From Scyliorhinus canicula (taxonomy: Eukaryota), in assembly GCF_902713615.1 (NCBI RefSeq), contig NC_052176.1:2418001-2482000 (forward strand): a stretch of DNA of 64,000 nt, read 5' to 3'. The notes under the pieces are model-generated. The model saw nothing but the letters and a program-made list of their open reading frames with translations, had not been told where the DNA came from and searched no databases. Of this stretch, positions 2,955-58,427 are shown in pieces. Numbering within the stretch: the stretch's first letter is position 1; every line of letters begins with the position of its first letter. A program made the position numbers and the translations under genes.

Positions 2955-5309
2955 CCCCCACACGCAGACCCTCAGACAACAGGTCCGAGAATCCCTGCCA
3001 GAACCCTCTCAATATTGGATATCTCCGGAACATGGGGATGTGATTCACGCCCCCCCCCCCCCCCAACATCGGTGCACCACCCAAACCTATCTTCCACCCC
3101 CTCAAAAACTCTGCCCACCCTCGCCACCGTCATGCAGGCCCCACTTCAAACTGGATGAGGCTTCACCTCACGCTCGACGAGGACGCACTCTCCCTCCGCA
3201 AGGCCTCAGCCCACGTTCTGGCCCGCACCTCCCCACCCAACTCCTCCTCCCATTTACCCTTCACCTCCTCCGCCAGGGCGGCCCTCCCTCTCCCTCAGCT
3301 CCTGGCAAATACCTTCCCCTCCCCCCCCCTTTTCCGTCCTCCGACAGAAGCTTATCCGGCGGCGCAGGAGACGGCAGCCCCGAGACGGACAGAACCCCTC
3401 TCCGCACACGATCCCGAACCTGCAAGGTACCGCAACCCGTGGGCAACCCGTACATTTCGCTCCAGCTCCTCCAGCCCCGCAAATTTGCCCCCCCCCCCGT
3501 AAAACAAGTCCCTGAAGTATTCGATTCCCGCCTGCCGTCACCCCAGGAACCTCACACCCCGGCACAAAGATATGGTTATCACAGATAGGCACCCACAGCG
3601 ACATGCCCGCCAACCCCAAGTGCTGCTTACGCTGCCCCCACACACCCTCAGAGCCACTGGGCTAACGGAGTACCTGGCCGGCGGGAACGGCAGAGGCGCC
3701 AACAACAAAGCCCTCAAAAGCGTTCCGCGACACCATGCCGCATCCGCCGGTCCCCAAACCCACCTCTCCCCCACAGCCCATTTCCTCACCATCGCAATCT
3801 TTGCAGCTCAATCATTTATCAAATTCGGTAATGCCAGTCCCTCCCCCCCCCCCCCCCCTCGCCCCCCAACGCCTGCGGGGCCTTCCCCGCCCACACAAGC
3901 CCCCGAGGTCAACCCACTGACTTTGCTGAAGAATGACTTAGGGACAAGGATGGGGAGGTTCTAAAACGCCAACAGAAGCCTCAGCCTCACCGTCATTGTC
4001 ACTGCCTGCCCCACGCTCGCCCCACCAGCGACAACAAAACATCCCACCTCCTAAAATCCACCTTCATCCCCTCCGCCAATCGGGCCACGTTCAACCTATG
4101 CAGCTGGGCCAGGCTCCGCGCCAATTGTTAGCACCGCTGTCTCATGGAGCCGAGGTTCGATCCCGGCCCCGGGTCTCCGTCCGCGTGGAGCTTGCGTATT
4201 CATCCTCCGTGTCTGCGTGGGTCTCACCCCTCCCACAACCCAAAAAAAAGATGCGCGGGGTTAGGTGGATTGGCCGCGTTAAATTGCCCCTTCGTCGGGG
4301 GGGGGGAAAAAAAATAACTGGGTGCTCTAAATTTAGTTTGAAAAAAAGGAAAGCTGTCGACCGTCCCAAGGGCGGCCGCCGAATTCGTCCACCGCTAACA
4401 ACGCCCTTGAGCAGAGTTTTCAGCGCAGGTTGTTGGGCGTGGAGTGAGCCTGAAGGCTCCGCAGTGTGGTGCAAACTTGCAACAAGTTAACACAGCAGGG
4501 TTCATCTGCAAAGCGCCTCGGGACACCTTGAGGTCGCGGAAAACCTTTTTTCGACTTTCTTGTTTTAAAGCATTGGGTCTGTTTGACAGCATTCCCCAAA
4601 TACCACAGCAAGGCACGAAGCAAAGTCATAACCGCCAGACAGATCTGAAAGATTTGAGAGACGTCGATTATCTTTTAATGAGCCAGGTTAACTGGGGCCA
4701 GAATGTTTGAAACGCAGCCAAAATAGTGAAGTTCAATATCCACCGATAATTGCCTTCCAAATCATTTTTATTTAGTGACCAAGGAGTTGGCCGCAATCTA
4801 TTCCCTTGGCAGGATTTCTCATGGCTCTCGCCCCCCCCCCCCCCCCCCCCCCCCGACCCAAAGATGTGCAGGGCAGCTGGATCGGCCACGCTAAATTGCC
4901 CCTTATTTGGAAAAATTGGAACAGAAACCGAACGCAAGTCTTTCATCTCATCTCTTGGCAGCAGAGCTTCGCTCCCACCACTAGAGGACAGCAGAGGCTG
5001 TGAATCTGCTGCACAGCTCGCTGGCCCCATCCGGTGGACAAGAGCTCCTACTGCAGCGAATTGCTCTCCGCCAATGCTGCCGAGGAGCCTCGGAGATTTG
5101 CTGCAGTCCCGGCGGTGCAGGGACTGGATCATGCAGGGGGCTTTCACAGTAACTTCATTGCACTGTTAATGTAAGCCTACTTGTGACACTGATAAAGATT
5201 AATATATATCCGCAGTGCAGGACAACGCCCTTCGGCCCATCGAGTCTGCACTGACCGTCTGAACGAGCATCCTACCTTGGCTCATTCACCCCACCCTAAC
5301 ACCACAACC

Positions 5310-6350
5310 TCCCCCAGTGCAGTGAGCCCCCCCTCCCCCAGAGCAGTGAGCCCCCCCCTCCCCCAGAGCAGTGAGCCCCCCCTCCCCAGAGCAGTGAGCC
5401 CCCCCTCCCCCAGAGCAGTGAGCCCACCCTCCCCCAGAGCAGTGAGCCCCCCCTCCCCCAGTGCAGTGAGCCCCCCCAGTGCAGTGAGCCCCCCCCTCCC
5501 CCAGTGCAGTGAGCCCCCCCTCCCCCAGTGCAGTGAGCCCCCCCTCCCCCAGAGCAGTGAGCCCCCCCCTCCCCCAGTGCAGTGAGCCCCCCCAGTGCAG
5601 TGAGCCCCCCCTCCCCCAGTGCAGTGAGCCCCCCCTCCCCCAGAGCAGTGAGCCCCCCCTCCCCCAGAGCAGTGAGCCCCCCCTCCCCAGAGCAGTGAGC
5701 CCCCCCTCCCCCAGAGCAGTGAGCCCACCCTCCCCCAGAGCAGTGAGCCCCCCCTCCCCCAGTGCAGTGAGCCCCCCCAGTGCAGTGAGCCCCCCCTCCC
5801 CCAGTGCAGTGAGCCCCCCCTCCCCCAGTGCAGTGAGCCCCCCCTCCCCCAGAGCAGTGAGCCCCCCCTCCCCCAGTGCAGTGAGCCCCCCTCCCCAGTG
5901 CAGTGAGCCCCCCCTCCCCCAGTGCAGTGAGCCCCCCCCTCCCCCAGTGCAGTGAGCCCCCCCTCCCCCAGAGCAGTGAGCCCCCCCTCCCCCAGAGCAG
6001 TGAGCCCCCCCTCCCCCAGTGCAGTGAGCTCCCCAGTGCAGTGAGCCCCCCCTCCCCAGTGCAGTGAGCCCCCCCCTCCCCCAGTGCAGTGAGCCCCCCT
6101 CCCCCAGCGCAGTGAGCCCCCCCTCCCCCAGTGCAGTGAGCTCCCCCAGTGCAGTGAGCCCCCACCAGTGCAGTGAGCCCCCCCTCCCCCAGTGCAGTGA
6201 GCCCCCCCCTCCCCCAGGGCAGTGAGCCCCCCCCTCCCCCAGGGCAGTGAGCCCCCCCCTCCCCCAGGGCAGTGAGCCCCCCCCTCCCCCAGGGCAGTGT
6301 GCCCCCCCTCCCCCAGTGCAGTGAGCCCCCCCCCTCCCCCAGAGCAGTGA
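5310..6350. repeat. C-rich minisatellite, ~24-bp unit CCCCAG(T/A)GCAGTGAGCCCCCCT
   Basis: Over 40 directly visible tandem units. Confidence 0.95.
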
Positions 6351-6379
6351 GATGGGATTTCTGAATCAGCTGCTGCACT

Positions 6380-6800
6380 GCAGGAACTACATTGACCAGA
6401 AGGCTTTGCGGGCAACGGAGGCGCGCAGGCGCACCAATCGCTACTCCTCAAACCTTTTTAATTTCCATCGCTATTCGGGTCACATGTGTTGTTTGTAGGG
6501 TGATGGGGCTTGACGGGAAAATAAAAGCAAAAAAATGAAGAAGACGAAAAGAATAAATAAACCGTTCGATTTGAAGCTATCGCCGTGGGTGCGCATGCGT
6601 TCCCCGGCGCCCGATCAGAGCGCCTGCGCAGGGTGCCGGCACGGCTGCCAGTTATGCGCAGGCGCAGCCGGGCCCACTCCCGTGTTTGTGCGCAGGCGCG
6701 GGATCTGCTCGAGCCCCGCCCTCCCCCGGATCGAGTTGAAGCTCCGGCGGCGGCGGCGGCGGTGAGTAAGGGAGCGGCGGGGCTGAGGGTGTTTGGGGGG
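6380..6800 (+). promoter_or_regulatory. CpG-island promoter of GPR137 with five NRF1-type sites, a ZNF143/SBS-like motif and a CCAAT box
   Basis: CpG-rich. NRF1-like TGCGCA(T/G)GCGC variants at 6422, 6590, 6619, 6655 and 6689. ACTACATTGACCAGAAGGC at 6386-6404 resembles ACTACAnnnCCCAGAATGC. CCAAT at 6434 and a GC box at ~6714. Confidence 0.75.
6700..6761 (+). other. GPR137: Putative non-coding first exon of GPR137 (start approximate)
   Basis: (GGC)n tract ending in a strong donor GCG|GTGAGT (GT at 6762) within the CpG island. Confidence 0.6.
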
Positions 6801-6804
6801 GGTT

Positions 6805-7555
6805 GGGGGGCAGGGTGAGGGGGTCAAGGGGGGGCAGGGTGAGGGGGTCAAGGGGGTGGCAGGGTGAGGGGGCCAAGGGGGGGCAGGGTGAGGGGGTCAA
6901 GGGGGGCAGGGTGAGGGGGCCAAGGGGGGGCAGGGTGAGGGGGTCAAGGGGGGCAGGGTGACGGGGATCAAGGGGGGCAGGGTGACGGGGATCAAGGGGG
7001 GCAGGGTGAGGGGGTCAAGGGGGGGCAGGGTGAGGGGGGTCAAAGGGTGAGGGGGTCAAGGGGGGGCAGGGTGAGGGGGTCAAGGGGGGGCAGGGTGAGG
7101 GGGTCAAGGGGGGGCAGGGTGAGGGGGTCAAGGGGGGCAGGGTGACGGGGATCAAGGGGGGCAGGGTGAGGGGGTCAAGGGGGGGCAGGGTGAGGGGGTC
7201 AAGGGGGGGCAGGGTGAGGGGGTCAAAGGGTGAGGGGGTCAAGGGGGGGCAGGGTGAGGGGGTCAAGGGGGGGCAGGGTGACGGGGATCAAGGGGGGCAT
7301 GGTGAGGGGGGTCAAAGGGGGCAGGGTGAGGGGGTTGATGGGGGCTGGGTGAGAGGGGTCAAGGGTGAGGGTGGTCATGGGGGGGGCAGGGTGAGGGGGA
7401 TCAAGGGAGGCAGGGTAAGGGGGCAGGGTGAGGGGGGTCAAGGGTGGCAGGGTGAGGGGGGTCAAGGGTGGCTGGGTGAGGGGGCCGAGGGGTCTGGGTG
7501 AGGGGGTCAAGGGGGGGCAGGGTGAGGGGGGTCAAGGGGGGCAGGGTGAGGGGGG
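6805..7555. repeat. G-rich minisatellite, ~24-25-bp unit GGGGGCAGGGTGAGGGGGTCAA
   Basis: About 30 visible tandem units running into the N gap. Confidence 0.95.
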
Positions 7556-8055
7556 NNNNNNNNNNNNNNNNNNNNNNNNNNNNNNNNNNNNNNNNNNNNN
7601 NNNNNNNNNNNNNNNNNNNNNNNNNNNNNNNNNNNNNNNNNNNNNNNNNNNNNNNNNNNNNNNNNNNNNNNNNNNNNNNNNNNNNNNNNNNNNNNNNNNN
7701 NNNNNNNNNNNNNNNNNNNNNNNNNNNNNNNNNNNNNNNNNNNNNNNNNNNNNNNNNNNNNNNNNNNNNNNNNNNNNNNNNNNNNNNNNNNNNNNNNNNN
7801 NNNNNNNNNNNNNNNNNNNNNNNNNNNNNNNNNNNNNNNNNNNNNNNNNNNNNNNNNNNNNNNNNNNNNNNNNNNNNNNNNNNNNNNNNNNNNNNNNNNN
7901 NNNNNNNNNNNNNNNNNNNNNNNNNNNNNNNNNNNNNNNNNNNNNNNNNNNNNNNNNNNNNNNNNNNNNNNNNNNNNNNNNNNNNNNNNNNNNNNNNNNN
8001 NNNNNNNNNNNNNNNNNNNNNNNNNNNNNNNNNNNNNNNNNNNNNNNNNNNNNNN
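7556..8055. other. Assembly gap (500 N)
   Basis: Run of n characters. Confidence 1.
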
Positions 8056-8540
8056 CCCTGCACCACAATGAGTTCCTGCACTGATGGCCCCCGGGTGTGC
8101 CTCTGGGCACTCCTTCCTGTCTTTCGTTTGCCCGACGCCGACCGGGCTTCTGGAGCAACTGCTCCCGTCGGTAGGAGCATCCCAGCGGGGTCGCCTTTCC
8201 GGCATGTCCTGGCGGCAGCCTGGAGTCGTCCAACATCCCCCCCGTCGACTCGCAGGAGTTCCCCGGCTTGCGAGGGACCAGGAGGGCGGCAAACGCAACG
8301 GGAGACTTTGTCGGGGTCATGCAGGGGCCGAGTTGGGGTGTCGGACGGGGTGGGGCCGCCACAAAACCGCCCAACAGCTCATCCGCCCCCCCTCCAGCTC
8401 ACACCTTGCCCTGACTGCGGCCGAGTCCGTGCATTGGACTTCCCAGCCATCCTCCGAACCCATCGACCTGCAGCGGAAATGAGTCGCCCTCGAACCTGGG
8501 GGGGGGGGGGGGGGGGGGGGGGGACCGGCTAAGAAGAAGA
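8056..8540 (+). mobile_element. Degraded RTE-clade LINE 3' end
   Basis: Remnants resembling VRMPDxRLPKQLL, FRHVL..SNIP and a C-terminal CPDCGRV...LRTH zinc knuckle. Ends TAAGAAGAAGA. Confidence 0.65.
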
Positions 8541-32852: not shown

Positions 32853-34449
32853 AAGGGTTACTACCTGCAAAGGAAGAGTATGCAACTGGGATAACAGTAA
32901 ATAGCTACATCTTGCGGTCTTATCAAGGCAGCTTTTGAATCAGTAAGGGAATCGAGGGTTATGGGGAGAAGGCGGGAGTTGAGAATCATCAGATCAGTCA
33001 TTATCTCATTGCATGGAGGAGCAGCCTCGATGGGCTAAATAGCCTACTTCTGCTCTTATGGTCGAAGATGGCTTCCTCTATGTTGATCGTCATTTCGGAA
33101 TTTCTAAATTGCAAATGCTTTTCTTTATTTCTTTTCTGCTCACCTATCTGGGTTCCTTAAAAACGTGACTACCTTCAGGAATAGGGAACGGACTCTCCAT
33201 CAAGCTTCCCCCTTTCGCCCCCCCCCAAAAAACCCATGCATTTAATCCCCTCTTTGTACCGCCTACTTCAGCGGTCTTGTCCACTAACCTAATCCACAGA
33301 GGGATTGTGATCAATTTTAAGCCGCGATTGAGCAGAGAACCGAGACGGTGCTTTTTGAGCTGTCGGATCAAGGCCCAATTACTGTCTCAGCCGGTTGTAA
33401 GCAATCGCACAGCAGGATGTGTACAGTGGGCGAGTTTCCCTGGTACCCTGGGCAATGTTTATCCCTCGACGCACATCTCTGAAACAGCTGGGAACCACCC
33501 TCCCACACACACACACACACACTAGGCCATCTGGCCCTTGTTCATAAGATGGCTATATCTTTGTTGCAATCCCTCCCAGCTGTAGTATAATAACCAACAC
33601 ATTTTCCACCCTCCTTTAGTTCGAAGAAGAGTCAAACGGAGTCGGAACGTTAACTCTGTTGTCTGCTTCTACAGGTCGGTCCGACCCGGATCAACTATTC
33701 TGTTTACCGTGAAAAGCCAATTAAATCAAATGTACTTTCTTCACCCCAGAGAGTGTTGGTCTGTGCAATTGATCACCGCAGGAAGTAGCTGAGGCGAAAA
33801 CACTGTACGTCTCCAAGAAGCCGGTCGAAAAGGCACTCGGGGGGGGGGGGGGGGGGGGGGGGGTGGGAGGACTTGGGGGTGGTGAAGGGGGGAAAGTGGG
33901 ATAATAATAATAATCATCTTTATTGTCATAAGTAGGCTTACATTAACACCGCAATGAAGTTACTGTGAAAATCCCCTCGTCGCCACATTCCGGCGCCTGT
34001 TCGGGTACACAGAGGGAGAATTCAGAATGTCCAATTCACCTAACAAGCACGTCTTTTGGTATTCGTGGGAGGAAACCGGAGCGCCCGGAGGAAACCCCGC
34101 GCAGATATGGGGGAGAACGTGCAGACCCCGCACAGGCAGTGACCCAGCCGGGAATTGAACCCGGGTCCCTGGAGCTGTGAAGCAATAGTGCTAACCACTG
34201 TGCTACCGTGCTGCTATTGAGTTGGACGATCGGCCGTGACCGCGAGGAACGGGTGGAGCGGAGCAGGTTCGAAGGGCCGAACGGCTCTCCCTGCAGCTCC
34301 CGGTTATGATGCACCACCCAGTTGAATTGCCGGTGTCTGTGGTCCGTGAGGAAACAACGATCGAATCCGGGTACGGGTATGTGTTGGGGCATTGGCATTT
34401 GGGCCGTTGCCATGGGCAGCCAGTTTGGATGGGATGCCGAGGGGGGGCC

Positions 34450-35160
34450 TGAGGGGAACCTCCCTTTATCCAATCAGAGCGCTCCATTTGAGTAAAGGGG
34501 CGGGGAGAGGGACCTTTATCCAATCAGAGCGCTCCATTTGAGAAAGGGGGTGGGGTGAGGAACCTCATCCAATCTGCGCTCGTCCCCTGAGAAAAGGGGC
34601 GGGATAGGAGGTGCCGCCGTCCAATTGGCGCGGTCAGCAGCGAGAGGCGGGGCCAGAAACTCCGCCCCCTCCGCTTCATCCAATCAGCAGCCGGCGCTGG
34701 GTAAAGGCAAGTGGGATTGGCTCACCGCGTCATCCAATCAGCTGCCCTGCGCTGGGTAGCGGCTGGGGGAGTGACCCAACATCTCATCCAATCAGCGACC
34801 TGCGCTCGGTACGGGCAGGGGGAGGACCACCGCCTCATCCAATCAGTGCCCTGCGCTGGGTAGACGCAGGGGGAGACTGGCTGACCGCCTCATCCAATCA
34901 GCGGCCGGTACTGGGTGGAGGCCGAATGGGGGCACCGCCTCATCCAATGAGCGGGTGGTGGAGGGTGTGACTGATGCCATCATCGTCCAATCCGAGTACA
35001 GGGTAGGTGGAGAGAGTGCGCGCGTGGCCGCTCTTTTATCCAATCGGCGCACCGCGGCAGAGGGGGCGGGGAGAGGGGGGGGGCCAGGCCCTCATCCAAT
35101 CGGCGCACCGGGTCTCGAGGAGGGCGGAGCTGGTGACGTCATCCACTTAGCGCGGGCGGC
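34450..35160 (+). promoter_or_regulatory. Promoter of the CENPF-like gene: array of 13 CCAAT (NF-Y) boxes, GC boxes and a CRE
   Basis: CCAAT begins at 34470, 34520, 34569, 34621, 34680, 34734, 34788, 34839, 34894, 34944, 34987, 35040 and 35096. TGACGTCA at 35134-35141. CpG island extends to ~35800. Confidence 0.8.
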
Positions 35161-35203
35161 GGCGGGCGCGAGCTCCGAGTGAGCAAAACAAGACCCCAAC
35201 AGG
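35150..35203 (+). other. CENPF-like: Putative non-coding exon 1 of the CENPF-like gene (start approximate)
   Basis: Donor CAGG|GTGAGT (GT at 35204) just downstream of the CCAAT array. Confidence 0.6.
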
Positions 35204-37039
35204 GTGAGTTCCCGCCTTTCCCTCTCAAACCGTGTGAAGAAAAACAATTTTTAAAGTATTTTTGTTTTCAAAACGCGTTAATTTGACCGTCGGTGAGGAA
35301 ACCGCGGTGGGGGTGGGGGTGGGGGTGGGGGTGGGGGAGGGGCTGCTTTTTAAATGTTTTCACCTCAACGATTTTTTTTTCTGCCGTCAACCGACGGCGG
35401 CGACGACAACCTAACCTGCTGGGCCGGGCGGATTCGGGAAGCCCATTGGCTGGCGGCCGCCCGCCTGTCAATCAAAGAGGGCCACGTGGGAGCCGCTCCG
35501 CCCCCTGCCGGGCAGGTTTGGTTGCGCGGGGCGGAGGGGGCGGGGCCTGTACCCGCCCTCGCCCACACAACGTGGGGAGCCAAAGGCAACAGGGATGTGG
35601 TGGACCGAGGGGCAGCTTGGTGGCCATGCCCGGCCTGGTCGGATAAACCACCCCCTCCCCGCCTCGGGCGTGCCCTGGAAGGATAAATGGGCACGCAGCG
35701 GAGATTTAATCCACTCAGGAAATTAAATCCCCAGTTTGTGGATCCCACGCGGCGCAGGAAGAGGACGTTCATCCCGTCGGGTCTGCGCCGACTCCGTGAA
35801 AGGGCGCCCTGATCCCCCGCCGCCCTATAACCTGCACATCCCTGGACTCTTCAGGGGGAATTTGGTGCGGCCGATCCACCTAACCTGCGCATCTTTGAAC
35901 TTGTGTAGGAGAAAACCAGAGCGCCCGGAGGAAACCCACTTATTGTCACAAGTAGGCTTACATTAACGCTGCAGTTAAGTTACTGGAAAAGCCCCACGTC
36001 GCCACATTCCGGCGCCTATTCGGGTACATGGAGCGAGAATTAAGAATATCCAATTCACCTGACAGCACGTGCACACGCTCCACGGACCGTCGCCAGAATC
36101 AATCCCGGGCCCGTCATTTAAAAAAAAATTTAGTGTACCCAATTCATTTTTACAATTATGGGGCAATTTAGCATGGCGAATCCACCTACCCTGCACATCT
36201 TTGGGTTGTGGGGGCGAAACCCACGCAAACACGGGGGAGAATGTGCAAACTCCACAAGGACAGTGACCCAGAGCCGAGATCGAATCTGGGACCTCGGCGC
36301 CGTGAGGCTGCAGGGCTAACCCACTGCGCCACCGTGCTGCCCTGCAGATAGTATGTTTATATCTCACTGGGTAGCACGGAGGCGCAGTGAGTTAGCATTG
36401 CGGCCTCACGGCGCCCAGGTTATCCTCACTGTCCCAGCGTCCACCGCACTCTGGGGTAGCGAATTCCACGGATTCACAACTCCCTTTTAAATTTGCTACC
36501 TCTTATCCCGAGACTATTACTTCTCGTTCTCGAATGCCCCTCAAGAGGAAGCATCCGCTCCACATCTGCTTTATCTTGTGTATCACAACTTGATCGCCCC
36601 TCATTCTTCTAAACTCTCATCTCTCTTCACAAGATAAAGCCCTCGTCTCTGCTAGTATTTTTCCGACGCTTAGCTGTGCACGAACCCTGATTGTACCTCC
36701 ACACTGTGACCCACCCTCCCTGCCAAATTAGTTCCCCCCCCCCCCCACCCCACCGCGAGGTCCTATTTCAATTCTGGTGCGACCCACATGACTCGTACAG
36801 GTCCCCAGAAATGGACCCGGTGTTCCAGGAAACTAAAGCCGTCCCTCCACCATCTCTTTAGCCACGCATTGATCTGGTCTGTCCTCCTATCCCCACACTC
36901 CCCAACACCTGGCACCGGGTGTAATCCGGAGTTTACAGCCTTCTAGGTCCTGCGGTGTCTTTCCACAGATGCCCGCTCGGGATGTCCCGAAGCACTTTTC
37001 AGCCGATGGAAATTGTAGTCGTCGTTCAAGTGGAGGCAG

Positions 37040-37330
37040 TATGGCAGACAGGAACAGCTTCTTCCCCACAGCTACTAGACTCCTCAACGACTCCCCCTCA
37101 GACTGATTTATTTCCTGTAAGAACACTATTCACAACGCCCTATGGTGCTCTTGCTCATGTATTTGCTTTGTTTGGCCGCTTGTTCCGCACTGTAACCAAT
37201 TACGTATTTGTCGATGTACTTTGTCAATTATTCTTTTGTCTATTGAGTACGTACTTAGTACGTTCCTTTGGTCGCAGAAAAATACATTTCACTGTACTTC
37301 GGTACATTGTGACAGTAAATCAATCAATCA
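37040..37330 (+). mobile_element. Rex1/Babar-like LINE 3' end
   Basis: NSFFPTATRLLN remnant and tail GTGACAGTAAATCAATCAATCA. Confidence 0.65.
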
Positions 37331-37574
37331 GCAGCAAGCCCCCGCAAGCAGCAGAGTGGCAATGGACAGATTTTACCATTGTGATGCAGACTGAGCCATA
37401 AATATTGTCCGGTGCATCAGCGACAGCATCCCTAACCATCTTTTGAAATAGTGCTGGAGGATCTTTTTAGATCTGGTTCAGAGTGCAGATAGGGCTTCAT
37501 GGTGGCGCAGTAGTTAGCACCGCTGCCTCACAGCGCCAGGGACCCAGGTCCAGTTCTTGTCTTGGGTGACTCTG

Positions 37575-37750
37575 GAGTAAGACGTTTCACAACACCAAGT
37601 TAAAGACCAACAGGTTTATTTGATATTACAAGCTTTCAGAGCGCTGCTCCTTCATCAGGCGAAGTGGAGGCAGGTTCAGAAACACAGTTTATATAGGTAA
37701 AGGCACAATTGCAAGATAATTACAGATGTGAAGAATGGTTGGAAGATGTG
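37575..37750 (-). mobile_element. Penelope-like terminal fragment with a minimal hammerhead motif, nested in a SINE (37492-38000)
   Basis: Minus strand reads CTGATGA-AGGAGCAGCGCTCT-GAAAGCTT, then AATAAA and GGTGTTGTGA. Confidence 0.65.
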
Positions 37751-38594
37751 TGGAGTTAGCAGGTTCTCCCTACGTCAATGCATATTTCCTCCGGGTGCTA
37801 CGGTTTCCTGCCACAGTCCAAAGATGTGCAGGGTAGGTGGATTGGCCATGATAAAATTGCCCCTTAGTCTCCAGGGGTGTGTAGTTTGGGTAGGGTTGCG
37901 GGGTTAGGCTGGGGTAGTGGGTCTAGGTAGGGTGTTCTTTCGGAGGATCAGTGCAGACTCAATGGGTCGAATGGCCTCTGACTGCGCTGTAGGGATTCTC
38001 TGGTTCACTTGTCTGTGGGCTGGGACTTCAACGAGCGACTTCCTGGCTGCGATGGGTGAGGCAGAATTCTTTTTGTTTCTGGATAAATCACCAAATCTTT
38101 AGTGGCAGAGAGTTGGTACCATTCCAATGTGTTCGATCGAAGCCCAAAACATATGGGACCGGACAGAACTTGTGCATGCAAAAAAAAAACTCTCATCAGA
38201 AGTGTGCTAAAGTGGATCATACAGCAGAATTGTTTTGTACGTGTCCGCAGTCTTTTTAAAATTTTTAAACCACCGTTCGATGCCAAACTCGATTCCTGCC
38301 CGTCGTGTACAAAACCAGATGACTGATTTCCCTGGTGCCGATTCTACTTGAGCTCCTGGGGTTTGTGAATTCTGACTGGCTTGAAAGCTGTTTGACCCTC
38401 GGAAGCCTATTACCATGAGCAAACGAGCAGAATGTGAAAGAGGGAGTGAGACCGTACTCTATTATCAGCCTGCTCTGGAATGACTTTCCACTGCCGATAT
38501 CGCCCCGCTTTCTGTGCCACTTCTGGTTTTTGTGAACGGGGTTTTTGCTTTTCTCCTAGGCCTGATTGTCGATCGATGTCGTGTCCCAGCGATC

Positions 38595-38756
38595 ATGAGT
38601 TGGGCACCGGAGGAATGGAAATCCGAGCTACCCAGCAGAGCCCTGCAGAAGATCTCCGAGTACGAGAGCCAGCTGGAGAAACTGAAGAAAGAGCGGCACC
38701 AGAAGCAGCTTCAACTGGATAGTTTAGAAGTCACGTTCCAGAAACAGAACCACAAG
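38595..38756 (+). CDS. CENPF-like: CENP-F-like exon 2, start of CDS (MSWAPEEWKSELPSRALQKISEYESQLEKLKKERHQKQLQLDSLEVTFQKQNHK); exon begins at 38560
   Basis: Matches the CENP-F N-terminus MSWALEEWKEGLPTRALQKIQELEGQLDKLKKE. ctcctag| acceptor and AAG|gtgatt donor. Confidence 0.95.
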
Positions 38757-39690
38757 GTGATTTTTTTTTCTCTCTTCCCCCCCCCCCCCCCCCCCCCCCT
38801 TCGCTCCGTCTCACGGCCCTTAGTTTTCAGCGGGCTGTTGTCGGGTGCGAGGGAAAGTGAGAATCGTGATGAGCCAGGTCCATCGGTTCACCTTCCTTCT
38901 ACCGTCCCGCTCGTTGAGTGACACAGCAATAATGGAGTGTAGCATTTTTTTTAACGGTTCAGGCAGTGAATGATGGGAATTAGAAATGTGTCACCTCTCG
39001 CATGAATCACCAATGGGGATTTACGCCAATAGCATCCATCCAACGTGATTGAGATGTGTGACGGTGAGGGCAAAGACGTGGGAAGGAAAAAGAGGTTCTC
39101 TTATCCCCCCCCCAAGAGCATTAGCCTGGGACCTCTGAATCACTAGTCCAGTGACATTGCCTCTTCCCCACCATCTCCCCTAAAATACACCCTGTTCTGT
39201 GTATGTCACTGCATTTGGGAATTAGGTGAAGTTAAACGGCGTTTACATGGATCCTTGCGTTTGTGTAACGCCTCTAACAGCTTGACATTTCACATCTCAA
39301 TCAGGCTAAAGTTAATTTTAGCGAGATTATGCGAATGTACGGATTCGGCACAGGAATAGGACACTCTGCTCCACGATTCAATATGGTCATGGCTGACCGA
39401 TTGTAACCTCCCGCTTACCCCCGGTAACCTTTCAACCTCTTCTTTTATCAAAGAATCTTATCTACCGCCACCGTAAAAATAATCAAAGACTTTGCTTCCA
39501 TTGACTTTTGAGAGGCTAAATATTCCCCTCAGCTATGTCCTGAATGGACGAGCCTCCTTATTTTTGAGTAGTGACACCCCAATTTTAGTTATTACTGCAT
39601 ATGCACCCTGAGTGGCGTTCGCCTGCTCTCCTGAGTGCATCACCTGCAACCTGCTGCTGATTTTATTATGCCACTTGTGTTATTTCTAAG

Positions 39691-39887
39691 CTCGAGGGCG
39701 AACGCAGCGAGAATGCAGCCTTGAGGAGAGAGACGCAGGGCCTGACGGAGGCCCGCAACAGCCAGGAGAAGGCGCAGCAGAGGCTGTGCCACGAGATCCA
39801 GGTGAAGGAGGCCCTGGTTTGCAGCCTGGAGGGGCAGCTGCTGGCCACCAAGAAACAGATCGACGGCCTGGAGCAGGAACTAAAGAG
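39691..39887 (+). CDS. CENPF-like: CENP-F-like exon 3 (LEGERSENAALRRE...HEIQVKEALVCSLEGQL...LEQELKR)
   Basis: tctaag| acceptor and GAG|gtacca donor; 197 nt. Contains the CENP-F N-domain motif HELQVKE...LEGQL...LEQELKR. Confidence 0.93.
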
Positions 39888-40601
39888 GTACCATCTCGGC
39901 GTGTACTAGGGTGGCCACCGAGTGGCACAAAAATTGGATGAGGTGGGCAAGGTTGGGGGTGGGAAGGGGAGCCTCCACGTGTGAATGTGGGCGATGTGAA
40001 TGTTGGCCTTTAAATGGTGTGCAGACGTCTGTACCATTATTTAATGCAGCAGTAAGTCAGGTGAGTGGAGATGGAGTGTGCGCAGTATTTCTTGCCTGGG
40101 GCTCAGCTGTTGATTTGTAATTGTTCTGGTGACACGAGAATATTTAGTCGAGGATGAGAAATTGAAAACATCTTGACCTTCGATCTCACTATCTCTCTCT
40201 CTCGCTGTTGCGATTTATCTTGCGTTTCCTGCTGCAGCTACTATAGGCGCTACTCTGTGCAGTTTTGGCTTTTGTTCTGTCGCAACTGCGGGACCCGTCT
40301 GCTCCCGATTACTCTTAACTCATTCATTGCCGGGTCTGCAGAAACTGTTGGGCTCCTCTCCTCTCTCTCAGCCTCTTCTTCCTGCTTTTAAAGCTGCCAG
40401 GGACCGGTGTCCCCTCATTGCATCGGTTTCTTCTTTTCCCCCTTCACCTCTGCTCTGTCCAACCTCGGTGGTGTGCCCCTTGCACCCACCGGCTGCACTC
40501 CTTCATCCCGGTCTCTCAATATTAGTAATTTTAAGGTTGTTTGTTTTTTTTTAAACGGGAAAGGCGTCTTAACACACAGTAAAACCGTGGAATGATTTCA
40601 G

Positions 40602-54411: not shown

Positions 54412-57374
54412 CTGAGAACCTGATTCTTGCAACCAAACTTAAAGATCTTCAACAGGATCATGAGTTCCAACCGAACTCCGGGAATGCGGATCTTGCAGCG
54501 TTGGTGTGCGAATTGACTAAGAAGGATCGTAATGAGATCGACAAGTGTGAACCGGACGAAGACAGCCATCAGTCAAACAATGTGCAGTCTGTCGGAATGG
54601 CGACAGTTGTAGGGTGGCCGGTGAAGGTCAGAGAGGAGGAAATGTTGGATTCAGTGGAAGGAAGTCAACTTGGAGAATTGATGGTGACGTCTGTCCTCTC
54701 AGACCAAGACAGTGAGGCCAACCTCGAGGAAGACTCAAGTTTTACCACCAAAGTAAAATTGGAAGTTGTGCCAAGTGGAGCATTGACAGAAACCCGCGGC
54801 TCGGAAGAAGCAAGGGACGTGTTCTCAGATCCCGAAGAGAAAACGGGGGCGCAGCCCCACGGCTTTGAGAAAGAAACTGAGGAAGCAGGTGGGGCAGAAG
54901 CTGCGGTTGCACCTGGTGACCACACAGAGAAGGGCGAGGCAATGATTGACTGGCTTGACAAACCAATCACCGCGTCCTGGCATTTCGGAGGACGCGAGGT
55001 GGAATTGGACGAAGTAAAAACAAAAAATCAGATGCTACAGCAAGAGCTGGATGAGCTGAAACAAACGCTTGACAGTAAAGTGATTGAAGACCAGAGAAAC
55101 CAGCAGACTGTTGCAGAACTGAGGCGGAAGCTAAAGCAGGTGATGCAAAGGAACGCCGCAGAGGCCGAGTCCCCCACTGCACTGGTCACTTTGCAGGCAG
55201 GGCAAATCAGTGCCCTGGAAAAAGACCTGGAGCACGAGAGAACCAAGGTGGCCAAAATGCAAGAGAGCAATAAGATACTGGAGCTGGAATGCAGCAAAGT
55301 ATCCGAGCTTGCTAGAACCAGAGATGCCGGATCAGACGGCGATGAAATTCAGATCCTGCAGAGTGCTGCGTCTAAGAAGATGCAACAGCTTGAGCAACAG
55401 ATTGTGGAACTTAACTGTGAGAAGAGTTGCATTGAGGAGATCATAAAGGCAAATGGCCGGCTGGACGTTGTTGCTGCCGCGGACGAGAGGGGGGACCTTC
55501 TTCTGGAATGTCTGGAGCACGAAGATGTCCGAAACCTCGAATTTGACGCAATGCCTTCAAACCATCTGTGCTGCGACCCGGGAGAAATGCTGGGGCGGAA
55601 GCTGGAGGAGGAGAAAACCCGTTTTGTGGAGATCATGAAGGGGGGCGACGGAGGCGGCCAAGGGAAAGGCAATCGAGAGCTCTTGTTCGAGTACTTTAAG
55701 CACAAGGTGGTCGAGCAACTTGAGTTTGACGAACGGCTGCTGGAGCATCAGAAACTCCTGGGTGAACTTCAGAAAATGTGCGACGAGCTGGCGGCAGGGA
55801 AGGAGCAAGAAGAGCAAGCGAAAAGGCAGGCGCAGGAGAGGTTTGACCATCTGCAGGCCAGAATTCACCGGGAGACACAGCAGTTAACAGTGGCGCTGGA
55901 AGTTCAAAGTAAGAACATTGAGGGACTTCTCCTGAGCATGGAAGAGAAGGACCACACCATTCAGGTTTTAAATGAACGCCTGCAAGATGCTTCAACGGTG
56001 CTGATACGCCTCCAGAAAGAGAATTGCGAGCTGAAAGCTAACTGTGAGACAGTTTGGGAAACATCCACGCAGAAGTGCGTCGACAATGCAGGTCTCCCCG
56101 AGGATATCGTGCTGGGGCAACCCAGTGGTGCACCGTCCCCTCAGGCCAAACGACATGAAAATGGTGGCCTGCTGTCCATGGGCGGGCGAGCCCTCACAAT
56201 CGAGGGAAGGCCTGCTGATGGGACCGTCCAAAATTCAGAGACCGGCTACGATGAAAACGTGTGTGATAACTCGTTGCTCCTACCTATTGAGCAGGCAATC
56301 CGTTTGATTCTGACCCAGGAGGATCAATTCAAAGAACCAGAGGAGCGCGGTTCTGCTGTCAGGAAGATGCCAGAACTGAACGAGGACCCTGCTAAACAGG
56401 AGCAGCAGACAACAAAAATCGAAGCCAGCCGCTGTGAGGCATCGCCAATCGGACCAAAGGAGCAGAGGGCAAGCTCTGTCCCATCTACCAGCGCTCCCTC
56501 GGGCAAATCAGGGATTACCTCTGCAGTTATTTGTGCGCGACAGAATATTCAGCTGACGCAGAACGCTGAAAGCCTACGGCCGCGTAAGGAGCAGAATGAT
56601 GTGGCGGGCAATGACGCCGATCAGAGACAGAGCATCAGATGTCCTGGTGGTTTGCAGATGAAGATCGGCGAGCTGCAGGAGGAGTCGGTGAGCCTACACA
56701 CCAAGACATCCCCGGGCGAAGCTGAAACACCGACTGAGAAGGGAACAACGGAAACTGCCGACTCTAAATTTGCTCTGGTTTTAGGAGAAAAGCAGTCAGT
56801 TGGTGAATTGAGAACCGAGGCAGAGCTGATTGAAGAAGTGGAAAGGGTGACTGGCAGATTTAATGAAGCCTTAAAGGTCTCAGAAGAGGAACGCCAAAAG
56901 ACAGAAGAATCAAACCAGAAAGTGGTTGGCGCTTTGAACGAAGAATTGAACTCCTTGCACAAAAGATGCACGATTCTGGAACAAGAGAGGGAGTGTCTCT
57001 GTGCGGAAGTCCGGAAAGCCCAGGAGGCAGCCGGCGAAATGCAGTACGAGAAAGAAGGCTTAATGGAGGCAATCCAATCCAGCGAGGCTCTGCTGAGAGG
57101 GAGCACCGAAGAGAAAAACCACCTGGAGCGAGAGTTGGAGGCCCTGCGAGAGTGGAGGCAGAAGGGCCTGGGAGACGGCCCTCCCCGGCAAGCTGGAGAG
57201 GAAAGCGGCCAGGAGGAACGGCAAGCATTGCGGGGGACGCAGGACCAAATGCTGGAGCTGGAGGACAAATGCAGGGCGTTGAACAGCGAGGTGGCGAGTG
57301 CAAAGCTCACCCAGGAGCAGATTCAGGAAGAGTTGGAGAAAGCCCAGACTGAGAAGTCTGAGCTACAGTGCCAG
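54412..57374 (+). CDS. CENPF-like: CENP-F-like giant exon 12 (~988 codons; acidic low-complexity and coiled-coil segments)
   Basis: ttttag| acceptor, phase 1, continuing into the 977-aa ORF 54501-57434. CAG|gtactg donor. Open for 2.96 kb. Confidence 0.92.
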
Positions 57375-58427
57375 GTACTGTACAGTTTTGTTCTCCCTTT
57401 TATTTATCCGGATTCTCCCACTATATTTTCCTGAAGGGGCCTAACGTTGCAGGGCTCTGACTCCATGCATGGATATGCCCAGGGTTTAAGCGAGGCCGTT
57501 TCCGTCCCCTGTTCTGCTTCATAGCAGAAAGCCTTGTATTTACACAGCACCATTCCATGACCAGGATGGCTCAAAGACTTTTATTTACAGCCAGTGTAGT
57601 GTAGGAAATGTTAGTATATTTATTATCCTACCTGCCTCCACTTTTCACGTGACTGGTTTGCATTGCCCTGGGGTTGAGTCGAAAGTCCTTTTGAGATCAG
57701 TCTGGGATCTGGGGGATCTTGAGGGTTGGGGTTTGGTCGCATCTGGACTGTCTCTGGGAGTCTTGCAACAGACGGCGCAGGGCAGTAGTTGTTACCACCT
57801 TTATAAATTTTAATTAATTTTACATCACGTTGGAAGAGTTTATAGAACCACCAAACGTGTCTATATTTAGACAATTCTGCGCAGTAATGAGGGACATTAA
57901 AATAAGGACCCATTCACCCTCTCACTCAGTGAAAGGTCCCTCTGCACTGTTTTGTAAAGAATATAACAGCCATCCCTCGTGCCCTGGTCAATAATTAACC
58001 CTCTGGTACCATCACAGTGATCTAATTATTTGCTGTTTGTGGGGGCTTGACATTAACAACTTGGCTGCCGCGTTACAATGGCGACAATTACTTCATTGAC
58101 TGTAAACTCCTTTGGAATGTCTTTTTTAAAATTATTCATTCATGGAATGTTGGCGTCCCTGGCTGGGCCAGAATTTGTTGCCCATCCCTAACTGCTCCTT
58201 GAACTGAGCTGCCAGGCATTAAGAGTCTACCTTGTTGCTGTGGATTTGGAGCCACATGTAGGCCAGGCCGAGTAAGGGAGGCAGATTTCCTTTGTGAACC
58301 AGGTGGGTTTTTAATGAAAATTGACCCAAGTGCTTTCATGGACATCGTTAGATTTTAAATTCCAGGTTTTTATTGAATTTAAATTACACAAGCTACCGTG
58401 GTGGGATCCGAACCCGGGTCGCCAGAG

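What the first reader, a model, noticed from the sequence alone, without database searches (positions are those of the whole stretch)
34470..35141. Promoter built from a phased array of 13 CCAAT boxes about 52 bp apart
Seen: thirteen same-strand CCAAT motifs, mostly CATCCAATCAGC, with spacings 50, 49, 52, 59, 54, 54, 51, 55, 50, 43, 53 and 56 bp. Each is followed by a G-rich, GC-box-like spacer. Spacers have diverged while the CCAAT core is invariant, and the array ends in a perfect CRE just before exon 1. Known: G2/M promoters usually carry 2-3 NF-Y sites about 32 bp apart. Inference: an old tandem repeat has been domesticated into a high-valency NF-Y/Sp array phased at about five helical turns, with selection preserving only the motif.
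Basis: partly seen in the sequence, partly recalled or inferred. Interest (0 to 1): 0.7.

Follow-up and report, generated by a model that had tools for sequence, protein, structure and literature searches.

The report
Shark CENPF-like promoter with 13 CCAAT boxes
In this shark, the single CCAAT box in front of a centromere-protein-F-like gene in three other sharks and rays has been copied into 13 evenly spaced boxes just upstream of the transcript start; the boxes stayed intact while the DNA between them drifted, an unusual but not unprecedented way to build a promoter.

Summary
Thirteen same-strand CCAAT boxes lie at 34470-35100 with exactly the reported spacings, where 0.77 are expected by chance. 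They sit in a decayed 50-56 bp tandem repeat inside a CpG-rich island.

The gene downstream is an elasmobranch "centromere protein F-like" gene. Spliced contigs from three studies join 35203 to 38560, and their 5' ends lie at 35114-35141. The array therefore directly abuts the transcribed exon 1.

T-CCAAT-N-N-G is invariant in all 13 units. The other columns are only 45% identical on average.

New here: the orthologous promoters of a skate, a sevengill shark and a zebra shark each carry one composite CRE+CCAAT element and no repeat. The array is thus a lineage-specific amplification of the gene's own CCAAT element, not an old anonymous repeat put to use. The ancestral proximal box has decayed to CCACT and now lies inside exon 1.

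Helical phasing is not supported: the spacing SD is 4 bp. Only 5 of 13 spacers hold a true GC box. NF-Y binding and function are inferred, not shown.

First readers of this scan noted similar CCAAT arrays at other promoters of the same genome. Those notes are unchecked.

Verdict: a real feature, a new variant of a known kind, of moderate interest.

The parts
34406..34420 (+). RFX X-box-like motif (GTTGCCATGGGCAGC). It marks the ancestral upstream edge of the promoter; the array lies between it and the CRE.
   Evidence: Pattern search. The skate has the perfect palindrome GTTGCCATGGCAAC 89 bp upstream of its CRE (L002 8476). Heptranchias has GTTGCCCTGGGAAAC 22 bp upstream (L001 7954).
34463..34613 (+). 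Array subfamily A: units 1-3, period 49-50 bp, CCAAT at 34470, 34520 and 34569. The spacers carry GC or GT boxes.
   Evidence: Units 1 and 2 are 90% identical.
34614..34672 (+). Unit 4, a singleton: CCAATTGG at 34621, palindromic, so CCAAT reads on both strands. It holds two GC boxes.
34673..34979 (+). Array subfamily B: units 5-10, period 50-55 bp, CCAAT at 34680, 34734, 34788, 34839, 34894 and 34944. There is no GGGCGG core, only G-runs. This is a younger internal expansion.
   Evidence: (tree of units).
34980..35032 (+). Unit 11, a singleton: CCAAT at 34987.
35033..35133 (+). Array subfamily C: units 12-13, period 56 bp, CCAAT at 35040 and 35096, each with a GC box. These are the two boxes nearest the transcript start.
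   Evidence: They lie 14-74 bp upstream of the 5'-most transcript contig end at 35114.
35134..35141 (.). Perfect CRE, TGACGTCA. It is the ancestral partner of the CCAAT box.
   Evidence: It is invariant in all four species in alignment A1.
35143..35147 (+). Decayed ancestral CCAAT box of the 14th, proximal unit. It now reads CCACT.
   Evidence: Alignment A1: the other three species have CCAAT at this column..
35114..35203 (+). Non-coding exon 1. The 5' end is a lower bound taken from contig ends at 35114, 35134 and 35141. The GT donor is at 35204.
   Evidence: read laying joint 35202/3 to 38559/60 with GT..AG in X2, X13 and X14, three studies.
35390..35530 (.). Conserved block in intron 1: one inverted CCAAT (35445), CTGTCAATCA (35465), CACGTG (35483) and invariant GGTTTGGTTG (35515). 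It is a possible second cell-cycle module or alternative promoter.
   Evidence: Alignment A2 and motif positions. No transcript depth over 35393-35790.
38560..38756 (+). Exon 2, with the start codon at 38595 (MSWAPEEW...).
   Evidence: Pfam CENP-F_N, E = 2.9e-22. Contig pieces. Sequence.
39691..39887 (+). Exon 3.
   Evidence: Pfam CENP-F_N, E = 1.5e-18. Contig pieces.
34192..34821 (.). Separate low-level transcript over the distal half of the array and 270 bp upstream. Its strand is unknown.
   Evidence: X2 630-nt contig at depth 8.45, against 99.6 for the mRNA contig. There is zero depth on 34822-35140 and on unique intron bins. Only runs of study P2 hold the array's words.

Best explanation
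The array is a lineage-specific tandem amplification of the gene's own proximal CCAAT-box element. It now forms the roughly 650-bp upstream promoter of an elasmobranch 'centromere protein F-like' gene.

Shown:
- Thirteen same-strand CCAAT boxes lie about 52 bp apart.
- T-CCAAT-N-N-G is invariant while the spacers have decayed.
- A spliced non-coding exon 1 starts at or just after the last unit.
- Three other elasmobranchs carry one composite CRE+CCAAT element here and no repeat.
- The original proximal box has decayed to CCACT and lies within the transcribed 5' end.

Inferred:
- Each box binds the NF-Y trimer. The flanks fit NF-Y's preference, and 52 bp leaves room for all sites to be occupied at once.
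- Purifying selection has kept the boxes intact.
- The cluster holds a long nucleosome-free, CpG-rich region open and drives robust transcription from the start sites at its 3' edge. Sp/KLF-type sites in some spacers would help.
- As units were added, the start site moved upstream of the ancestral CRE/CCAAT, and the old box became dispensable.
- Cell-cycle timing probably depends on other elements, such as the conserved intron-1 block.
For: - Array and statistics. Thirteen boxes are seen against 0.77 expected, P = 3e-12.
- Core versus spacer, all 13 units: TCCAAT and G at +3 have 0 changes. The 38 other alignable columns average 3.58 parsimony steps, none is invariant, and their mean pairwise identity is 45%. 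A column shuffle gives p about 1e-5.
- Core versus spacer, conservative test: counting only changes within the three unit subfamilies still gives P = 2e-4 to 2e-5 for five unchanged sites.
- No unit in the series of 13 has lost its box, because no spacing is doubled.
- NF-Y-type flanks: 10 of 13 units match CCAATSR, the NF-Y expression used in PMC4492089, and 13 of 13 have G at +3. CAG directly 3' of CCAAT is described as optimal for NF-Y in PMC12065363.
- Gene identity: Pfam CENP-F_N on exons 2 and 3 and the Rb-binding C-terminus. Full-length relatives are named 'centromere protein F-like' in 13 elasmobranchs.
- Transcript evidence: the GT..AG joint 35203 to 38560 appears in three studies, with contig 5' ends at 35114-35141.
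- Orthologues: one GGTGACGTCA[C/T]CCAATCAG element and no 50-56-bp repeat in Heptranchias, Amblyraja and Stegostoma.
- The units share the TCATCCAATCAGCG core with the zebra shark's single box, including the T at -1 that skate and sevengill lack.
- NF-Y keeps promoter nucleosome-depleted regions open and fixes start-site choice in mouse cells (bioRxiv 10.1101/369389).
Against: - There are no binding, accessibility or reporter data for this species, so NF-Y occupancy is inferred from sequence alone.
- Three other elasmobranchs run the orthologous gene with one box, so 13 are clearly not required.
- Spacing is irregular (43-59 bp), with no significant helical phasing.
- The unit alignment is anchored on the motif, which inflates the contrast between core and spacer.
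- The spacers show no significant similarity to the ancestral sequence downstream of the box (z <= 2.4). The exact duplicated segment is therefore unknown.
- Start sites come from ends of assembled contigs, not from 5'-end mapping.
- No conserved canonical CHR (TTTGAA) was found near the start, so cell-cycle control of this promoter is unproven.
- The nearest relatives (Carcharodon, Mustelus) could not be read, so the array's age is unknown.
Confidence: 0.6

Rival explanations
1. It is a neutral promoter minisatellite. Slippage or unequal exchange in a GC-rich CpG island happened to copy a segment holding the CCAAT box. Only the one or two boxes nearest the start matter, and the rest are passengers whose cores have survived by chance, recency or local low mutability (CCAAT holds no CpG).
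For: - The array is lineage-specific, and one box suffices in three other species.
- Spacing is irregular and unphased.
- Parts of the array are young: units 1 and 2 are 90% identical.
- First readers noted several other CCAAT arrays at promoters of the same genome (unchecked). This could reflect a general tendency to form minisatellites.
- The spacers are rich in CpG and G-runs, which mutate and slip faster than CCAAT.
Against: - Seven core columns have no change in 13 units, while none of the 38 other columns is invariant.
- The conservative within-subfamily test still gives P = 2e-4 to 2e-5.
- The two singleton units 4 and 11 have lost nearly all other similarity yet keep CCAAT and G at +3.
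- The one box that did decay is the one now inside the transcribed region.
Confidence: 0.25
2. The array is functional, but its main factor or target differs from the reading above. Either another protein reads TCCAATNNG, or the distal units act as a divergent or antisense promoter or as an enhancer for another transcript rather than for the CENPF-like mRNA.
For: - T at -1 is invariant, although it is not a typical NF-Y preference.
- A separate low-level transcript covers 34192-34821 and is not joined to exon 1.
- Array words are held only by runs of one study.
Against: - T at -1 is already present in the zebra shark's single box, so it is inherited and need not be selected.
- The invariant positions, all five of CCAAT plus G at +3, are those NF-Y reads.
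- No gene was found on the minus strand upstream within the window.
- The transcript's strand is unknown.
Confidence: 0.1
3. The array is the repeated 5' head or LTR of a transposable element that inserted in front of the gene, as in ERV9/LTR12 or the CR1 elements with CCAAT-bearing monomers noted elsewhere in this genome.
For: - SINE copies flank the region (very high read depth at 34000-34200 and 35800-36390).
- Scan note s1-278430 describes CR1 heads with CCAAT monomers in this genome.
Against: - The unit core equals the single-copy orthologous promoter box of other species.
- The array lies between the ancestral X-box-like motif and the ancestral CRE.
- The 14-mer core occurs nowhere else in the 64 kb.
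- Read depth over the array is single-copy-like, unlike the flanking SINEs.
- There is no element-type ORF or terminal structure.
Confidence: 0.03

Closest known systems
G2/M-type NF-Y promoters (CCNB1, CCNB2, CDC25C, CDK1; TOP2A with five inverted CCAAT boxes)
   Same: These are TATA-less, CpG-rich promoters. They carry several CCAAT boxes with CCAAT[C/G][A/G]G flanks close to the start site. The gene here bears the name of a mitotic protein whose mammalian namesake CENPF is a FOXM1 target (PMC4492089).
   Different: The known cases have 2-5 boxes, typically 31-33 bp apart (PMC4982600), plus a CHR element. Here there are 13 boxes about 52 bp apart, all in one orientation, made by tandem duplication, and no conserved canonical CHR was found. 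The classical 31-32 bp pair exists in the intron-1 block of the other three species, not in the array.
ERV9/LTR12 and MER-type retroviral LTRs bound by NF-Y
   Same: They carry many good CCAAT boxes, more than 1 per 100 bp, often CCAATCAG, in repeated sequence that acts as a promoter or enhancer (PMC12065363, PMC4982600, PMC5085097).
   Different: Those are dispersed retroviral elements. This array is single-copy, grew in place from the host gene's own box, and has no element features.
Promoter VNTRs whose units carry a factor site (from my own knowledge: TYMS 28-bp repeats with USF E-boxes, MAOA uVNTR, ALOX5 GC-box repeats)
   Same: Tandem units in a promoter each add one binding site.
   Different: Those have 2-6 near-identical, polymorphic units. 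This one has 13 old, strongly diverged units in which only the site survives. Polymorphism was not tested here.
Monomer arrays at the 5' end of LINEs (mouse L1; CR1 with 131-bp CCAAT/octamer monomers in this genome, scan note s1-278430)
   Same: A repeated promoter module, each unit with a CCAAT box, lies upstream of the transcript start.
   Different: Those are element-borne and nearly identical between units. This one is a host-gene promoter with diverged units.

Membership tests
NF-Y-dependent multi-CCAAT (G2/M-type) promoter | Intact CCAAT pentamer with NF-Y-favoured flanks (CCAAT[C/G][A/G]G) | tested here: met
   13 of 13 units have CCAAT, 10 of 13 match CCAATSR, and 13 of 13 have G at +3.
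NF-Y-dependent multi-CCAAT (G2/M-type) promoter | Boxes lie within about 100 bp upstream of the transcript start | tested here: met
   Boxes 12 and 13 lie 74 and 14 bp upstream of the 5'-most contig end at 35114. Exon 1 is spliced to exon 2 in three studies. Contig ends are only a lower bound on the start site.
NF-Y-dependent multi-CCAAT (G2/M-type) promoter | Two or three boxes about 31-33 bp apart | tested here: not met
   Array spacing is 43-59 bp, mean 52.2. A 31-32 bp pair exists only in the intron-1 block of the other three species.
NF-Y-dependent multi-CCAAT (G2/M-type) promoter | CHR (TTTGAA-type) element, with or without a CDE, near the start | tested here: inconclusive
   There is no TTTGAA on the plus strand in 34000-35700. 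An inverted TTCAAA lies at 35267, TTTAAA at 35250 and 35349, and TTCGAA at 34268. None aligns as conserved in A1.
NF-Y-dependent multi-CCAAT (G2/M-type) promoter | NF-Y occupancy and cell-cycle-periodic expression | not testable with these tools
   No ChIP, ATAC or synchronised-cell data were available.
Tandem-repeat (minisatellite/VNTR) promoter element | Head-to-tail units of constant period | tested here: met
   TRF finds periods of 50 and 55, with 73-82% matches. The best single period is 52.4 bp, R = 0.89.
Tandem-repeat (minisatellite/VNTR) promoter element | Copy-number variation between individuals | not tested
   Reads were laid on transcript runs.
Transposable-element-borne NF-Y array (LTR12 type, LINE monomers) | Part of a dispersed element with its own ends or ORFs | tested here: not met
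   The core 14-mer occurs only in the array within 64 kb. Read depth is single-copy-like, unlike the flanking SINEs. The core is orthologous to a single-copy promoter box.
Helically phased site array | Site positions share a phase modulo about 10.5 bp | tested here: not met
   Rayleigh R = 0.23-0.49, p = 0.04-0.49 for periods of 10.0-11.0 bp, uncorrected. The spacing SD is 4.1 bp.

The most novel reading that the evidence does not exclude
Selection-maintained tandem amplification of NF-Y sites may be a recurrent mode of promoter evolution in this shark lineage. Several other CCAAT arrays are noted at promoters of the same genome. In this gene the array would have replaced the ancestral logic of a single CRE+CCAAT plus a twin inverted-CCAAT pair. 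The start site would have stepped upstream as units were added, and the old box decayed inside the 5'UTR. The result would be a roughly 650-bp platform coated by histone-like NF-Y trimers every 52 bp in place of nucleosomes.
Probability: 0.2. Interest if true: 0.7.

Novelty: new variant of a known kind. Interest (0 to 1): 0.5.

Why it matters
This is a clean natural example of binding-site turnover by tandem duplication. One conserved site became 13, the copies kept only the bases the factor reads, and the original decayed.

If NF-Y really fills the array, it offers a natural test bed for two questions: how site number and spacing affect promoter output, and how they affect nucleosome exclusion.

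Together with the other CCAAT arrays noted in this genome, it hints that sharks may often build promoters this way. That is directly testable with existing shark genomes and embryo ATAC or CUT&RUN data.

Tried and rejected
- Helical phasing was tested and is not significant.
- Transposable-element origin is rejected on orthology, single-copy depth and the absence of other copies in the window.
- Homology of the spacers to the sequence downstream of the ancestral box is no better than for shuffled spacers. The limits of the original duplicated segment stay unknown.
- Closer relatives could not be read. Two isoform look-ups were not on record.
- I searched the protein collection with the 119-aa frame that runs through units 4-10, hoping to catch translated arrays of relatives. 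It found nothing.
- Raw RNA run X20 gave almost no reads on this gene, so there is no true 5'-end mapping.
- X2 was first suspected to be an accessibility library because of its small size. It carries spliced contigs and is therefore RNA.
- Both run searches returned the same organism only.
- A search of earlier findings by sequence was blank.
- The run of N near 7560-8080 was left untouched.

Full report
**1. The observation**

The plus strand carries CCAAT at 34470, 34520, 34569, 34621, 34680, 34734, 34788, 34839, 34894, 34944, 34987, 35040 and 35096.

The rest of the window has 73 plus-strand CCAAT in 63.3 kb. That makes 0.77 expected in 672 bp, with P(>=13) = 3e-12. No other 672-bp stretch on either strand has more than five.

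The boxes are the best-kept part of a decayed tandem repeat. TRF reports periods of 50 and 55 with 73-82% matches. The repeat finder gives families of 50-, 51- and 36-nt copies.

Its box reads CCACT (35143-35147), and its left flank forms the perfect CRE TGACGTCA at 35134-35141.

The region is a CpG-rich island: 34200-35800 has GC 0.63 and CpG observed/expected 0.82.

All spacers are G-rich. Only units 1, 3, 4, 12 and 13 hold a GGGCGG-type core, and units 2, 9 and 10 hold GGGTGG.

**2. Which gene, and is this its promoter?**

The reading frames at 38595-38756 and 39691-39885 match Pfam CENP-F_N (E = 2.9e-22 and 1.5e-18). The frame at 61262-61978 matches the Rb-binding C-terminal domain of CENP-F.

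The 977-aa exon at 54501-57431 finds full-length proteins of about 1720-1840 aa. Their sources name these 'centromere protein F-like' in 13 sharks and rays. The closest is Carcharodon, at 63% identity on the large exon and 92% on the N-terminus.

I laid public runs of the same organism on 34000-39950. A GT..AG joint from 35203 to 38560 appears in three runs from three studies. Single contigs run exon 1, then exon 2 (38560-38756), then exon 3 (39691-39887).

The 5' ends of these contigs lie at 35141, 35134 and 35114. Transcription therefore starts at or upstream of 35114. That is 14 nt after the 13th box and upstream of the CRE.

Contig ends are not mapped start sites, so this is a lower bound. 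Unique intron bins have zero depth, so contaminating DNA is not the source.

One run (X2) also holds a separate 630-nt contig over 34192-34821. Its depth is about 8% of the mRNA's, and there is nothing between 34822 and 35140. Only runs of that one study hold the array's words. Its strand is unknown; a divergent upstream transcript is one possibility.

**3. Core against spacer inside the array**

I aligned the 13 units. T-CCAAT and the G three bases after it are identical in all of them. The 38 other alignable columns have a mean pairwise identity of 45% (range 26-87%), and none is invariant.

On a tree built from the non-core columns, those columns need 3.58 changes each on average, while the seven core columns need none. 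Shuffling columns gives a run of six invariant columns in about 1 of 100,000 trials.

This alignment is anchored on the motif, and spacers of different subfamilies may not be homologous. I therefore repeated the count inside the three clear subfamilies only (units 1-3, 5-10 and 12-13), using a lower bound on changes. A site then has a probability of 0.12-0.18 of being unchanged in all three. That gives 2e-4 to 2e-5 for the five CCAAT sites, before allowing for the choice of position. The singleton units 4 and 11 are not counted in that test, yet they also keep the box.

No spacing is doubled, so no unit inside the series has lost its box.

The flanks fit NF-Y. Ten of 13 units match CCAATSR, the expression used for NF-Y in PMC4492089. 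CAG after CCAAT is called optimal for NF-Y in PMC12065363.

From my own knowledge, NF-Y needs all five bases of CCAAT. Two trimers can sit together once the boxes are about 24 bp or more apart, so 52 bp allows full occupancy.

**4. Phasing**

The positions fit a 52.4-bp period well (R = 0.89), which simply restates the repeat. Modulo a helical turn they do not line up. R is 0.23-0.49 and p is 0.04-0.49 for periods of 10.0-11.0 bp, without correction for trying six periods. The spacing SD is 4.1 bp, about 0.4 of a turn. 'Five helical turns' is a coincidence of the mean.

**5. Other species**

DNA around the orthologue could be read for three species: Heptranchias perlo (L001), Amblyraja radiata (L002) and Stegostoma tigrinum (L003).

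In each, 1.4 to 4.4 kb upstream of the start codon, there is one composite element GGTGACGTCA[C/T]CCAATCAG followed by GC-rich sequence. This aligns with window 35129-35184 (alignment A1).

None has more than two plus-strand CCAAT within several hundred bases, and none has a 50-56-bp repeat.

These species represent a batoid, a squalomorph and a galeomorph lineage. The single box is therefore ancestral, and the array arose on the branch leading to the window's species, after its split from the carpet sharks.

The units carry TCATCCAATCAGCG, the same core as the zebra shark's single box. This includes the T before CCAAT, which skate and sevengill lack. The units thus descend from the local box.

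In the window the ancestral box itself reads CCACT, at a column where the other three species have CCAAT.

A motif resembling an RFX X-box lies upstream of the CRE in skate (a perfect palindrome) and sevengill. In the window it lies 64 bp upstream of the first array box. The array therefore sits between two ancestral landmarks.

I could not show that the spacers derive from the sequence downstream of the ancestral box. I could not read the closest relatives either.

**6. How it most likely works**

Shown:
- The array and its lopsided conservation.
- Its position directly upstream of a spliced exon 1.
- Its origin by amplification of a conserved CCAAT element.
- The decay of the original box.

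Inferred:
- NF-Y binds most or all units.
- Selection has kept the boxes.
- The cluster keeps a long CpG-rich stretch free of nucleosomes and fixes initiation at its 3' edge. NF-Y does this at mouse promoters (bioRxiv 10.1101/369389).
- The start site moved upstream of the old CRE/CCAAT as units were added, which freed the old box to decay.

I put 0.6 on this whole reading. I put about 0.9 on the structural and evolutionary part alone.

The main rival, at 0.25, is a neutral minisatellite in which only the nearest boxes matter.

Cell-cycle timing is not explained by the array, because no conserved canonical CHR was found. A conserved block in intron 1 (35390-35530) is a candidate for that role. 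In the other three species it carries two inverted CCAAT boxes 31-32 bp apart, the classical spacing. In the window only one remains. No transcript depth was seen over it.

**7. Comparison with what is known**

- It works like a multi-CCAAT NF-Y promoter. It fails that family's usual spacing, and a CHR could not be confirmed.
- It resembles the CCAAT-rich LTR12 and MER elements bound by NF-Y (PMC12065363, PMC4982600), but it is not element-borne.
- It resembles promoter VNTRs, but its units are old and diverged.

First readers of this scan noted other CCAAT arrays at promoters of the same genome:
- a roughly 51-bp array at a bidirectional promoter;
- about 30 boxes at 26 bp in front of FAN1;
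- 14 x 30 bp in front of V genes;
- a 91-bp ISRE-X-CCAAT module.

I could not check these. If they hold, the process is recurrent in this genome. That makes this single case less singular and the phenomenon more interesting.

**8. Verdict**

The feature is a new variant of a known kind. Interest is 0.5.

Noticed in passing
window 35390-35530; L003 5990-6135; L001 8390-8515; L002 8985-9115: A conserved block in intron 1. The three other species have two inverted CCAAT boxes 31-32 bp apart, the classical G2/M spacing; the window keeps only one (35445). The block also holds CTGTCAATCA (a PBX/MEIS-type site, in the window and the zebra shark), CACGTG, and GGTTTGGTTG invariant in all four species. 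No transcript depth was seen over it. It may be an alternative promoter or a cell-cycle module.
   Followed up: partly
window 34406-34420; L002 8476-8489; L001 7954-7968: An RFX X-box-like motif lies upstream of the CRE and CCAAT. It is a perfect palindrome, GTTGCCATGGCAAC, in the skate. The ancestral order X-box, CRE, CCAAT recalls the X1-X2-Y module of MHC class II promoters. It was not found in the zebra shark.
   Followed up: partly
window 35114-62000; loci L001-L003: The gene is the roughly 1720-1840-aa 'centromere protein F-like' form of elasmobranchs. It is flanked upstream by a GPR137-like gene and downstream by an RRM-RRM-zinc-knuckle gene. Elephant shark and coelacanth also list a CENPF of about 3000 aa, so this may be an old paralogue rather than the strict orthologue of mammalian CENPF.
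   Followed up: no
window 34192-34821: A separate low-level transcript covers the distal half of the array and the 270 bp upstream. It is seen as contigs in runs of one study and is not joined to exon 1. It may be a divergent upstream RNA; its strand is unknown.
   Followed up: partly
window 33960-34215, 35790-36390, 37780-37980: SINE-type dispersed repeats flank the promoter and lie in intron 1. Read depth there is thousands of times that of unique sequence, and their frames translate to the recurring 'GFDSGLGHCLCGVCT'-like peptide.
   Followed up: no
L002 8518-8533: The skate promoter has its own small tandem duplication, of the CRE half-site (TGCGTCA x 2.3), just upstream of the composite element.
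   Followed up: no
window 5282-6451 and 7142-7560, next to the N run at about 7560-8080: Long simple-sequence or minisatellite arrays give open frames of '[10 protein letters not shown]' and 'GGRVRG' type. They lie beside an assembly gap, which was left untouched.
   Followed up: no
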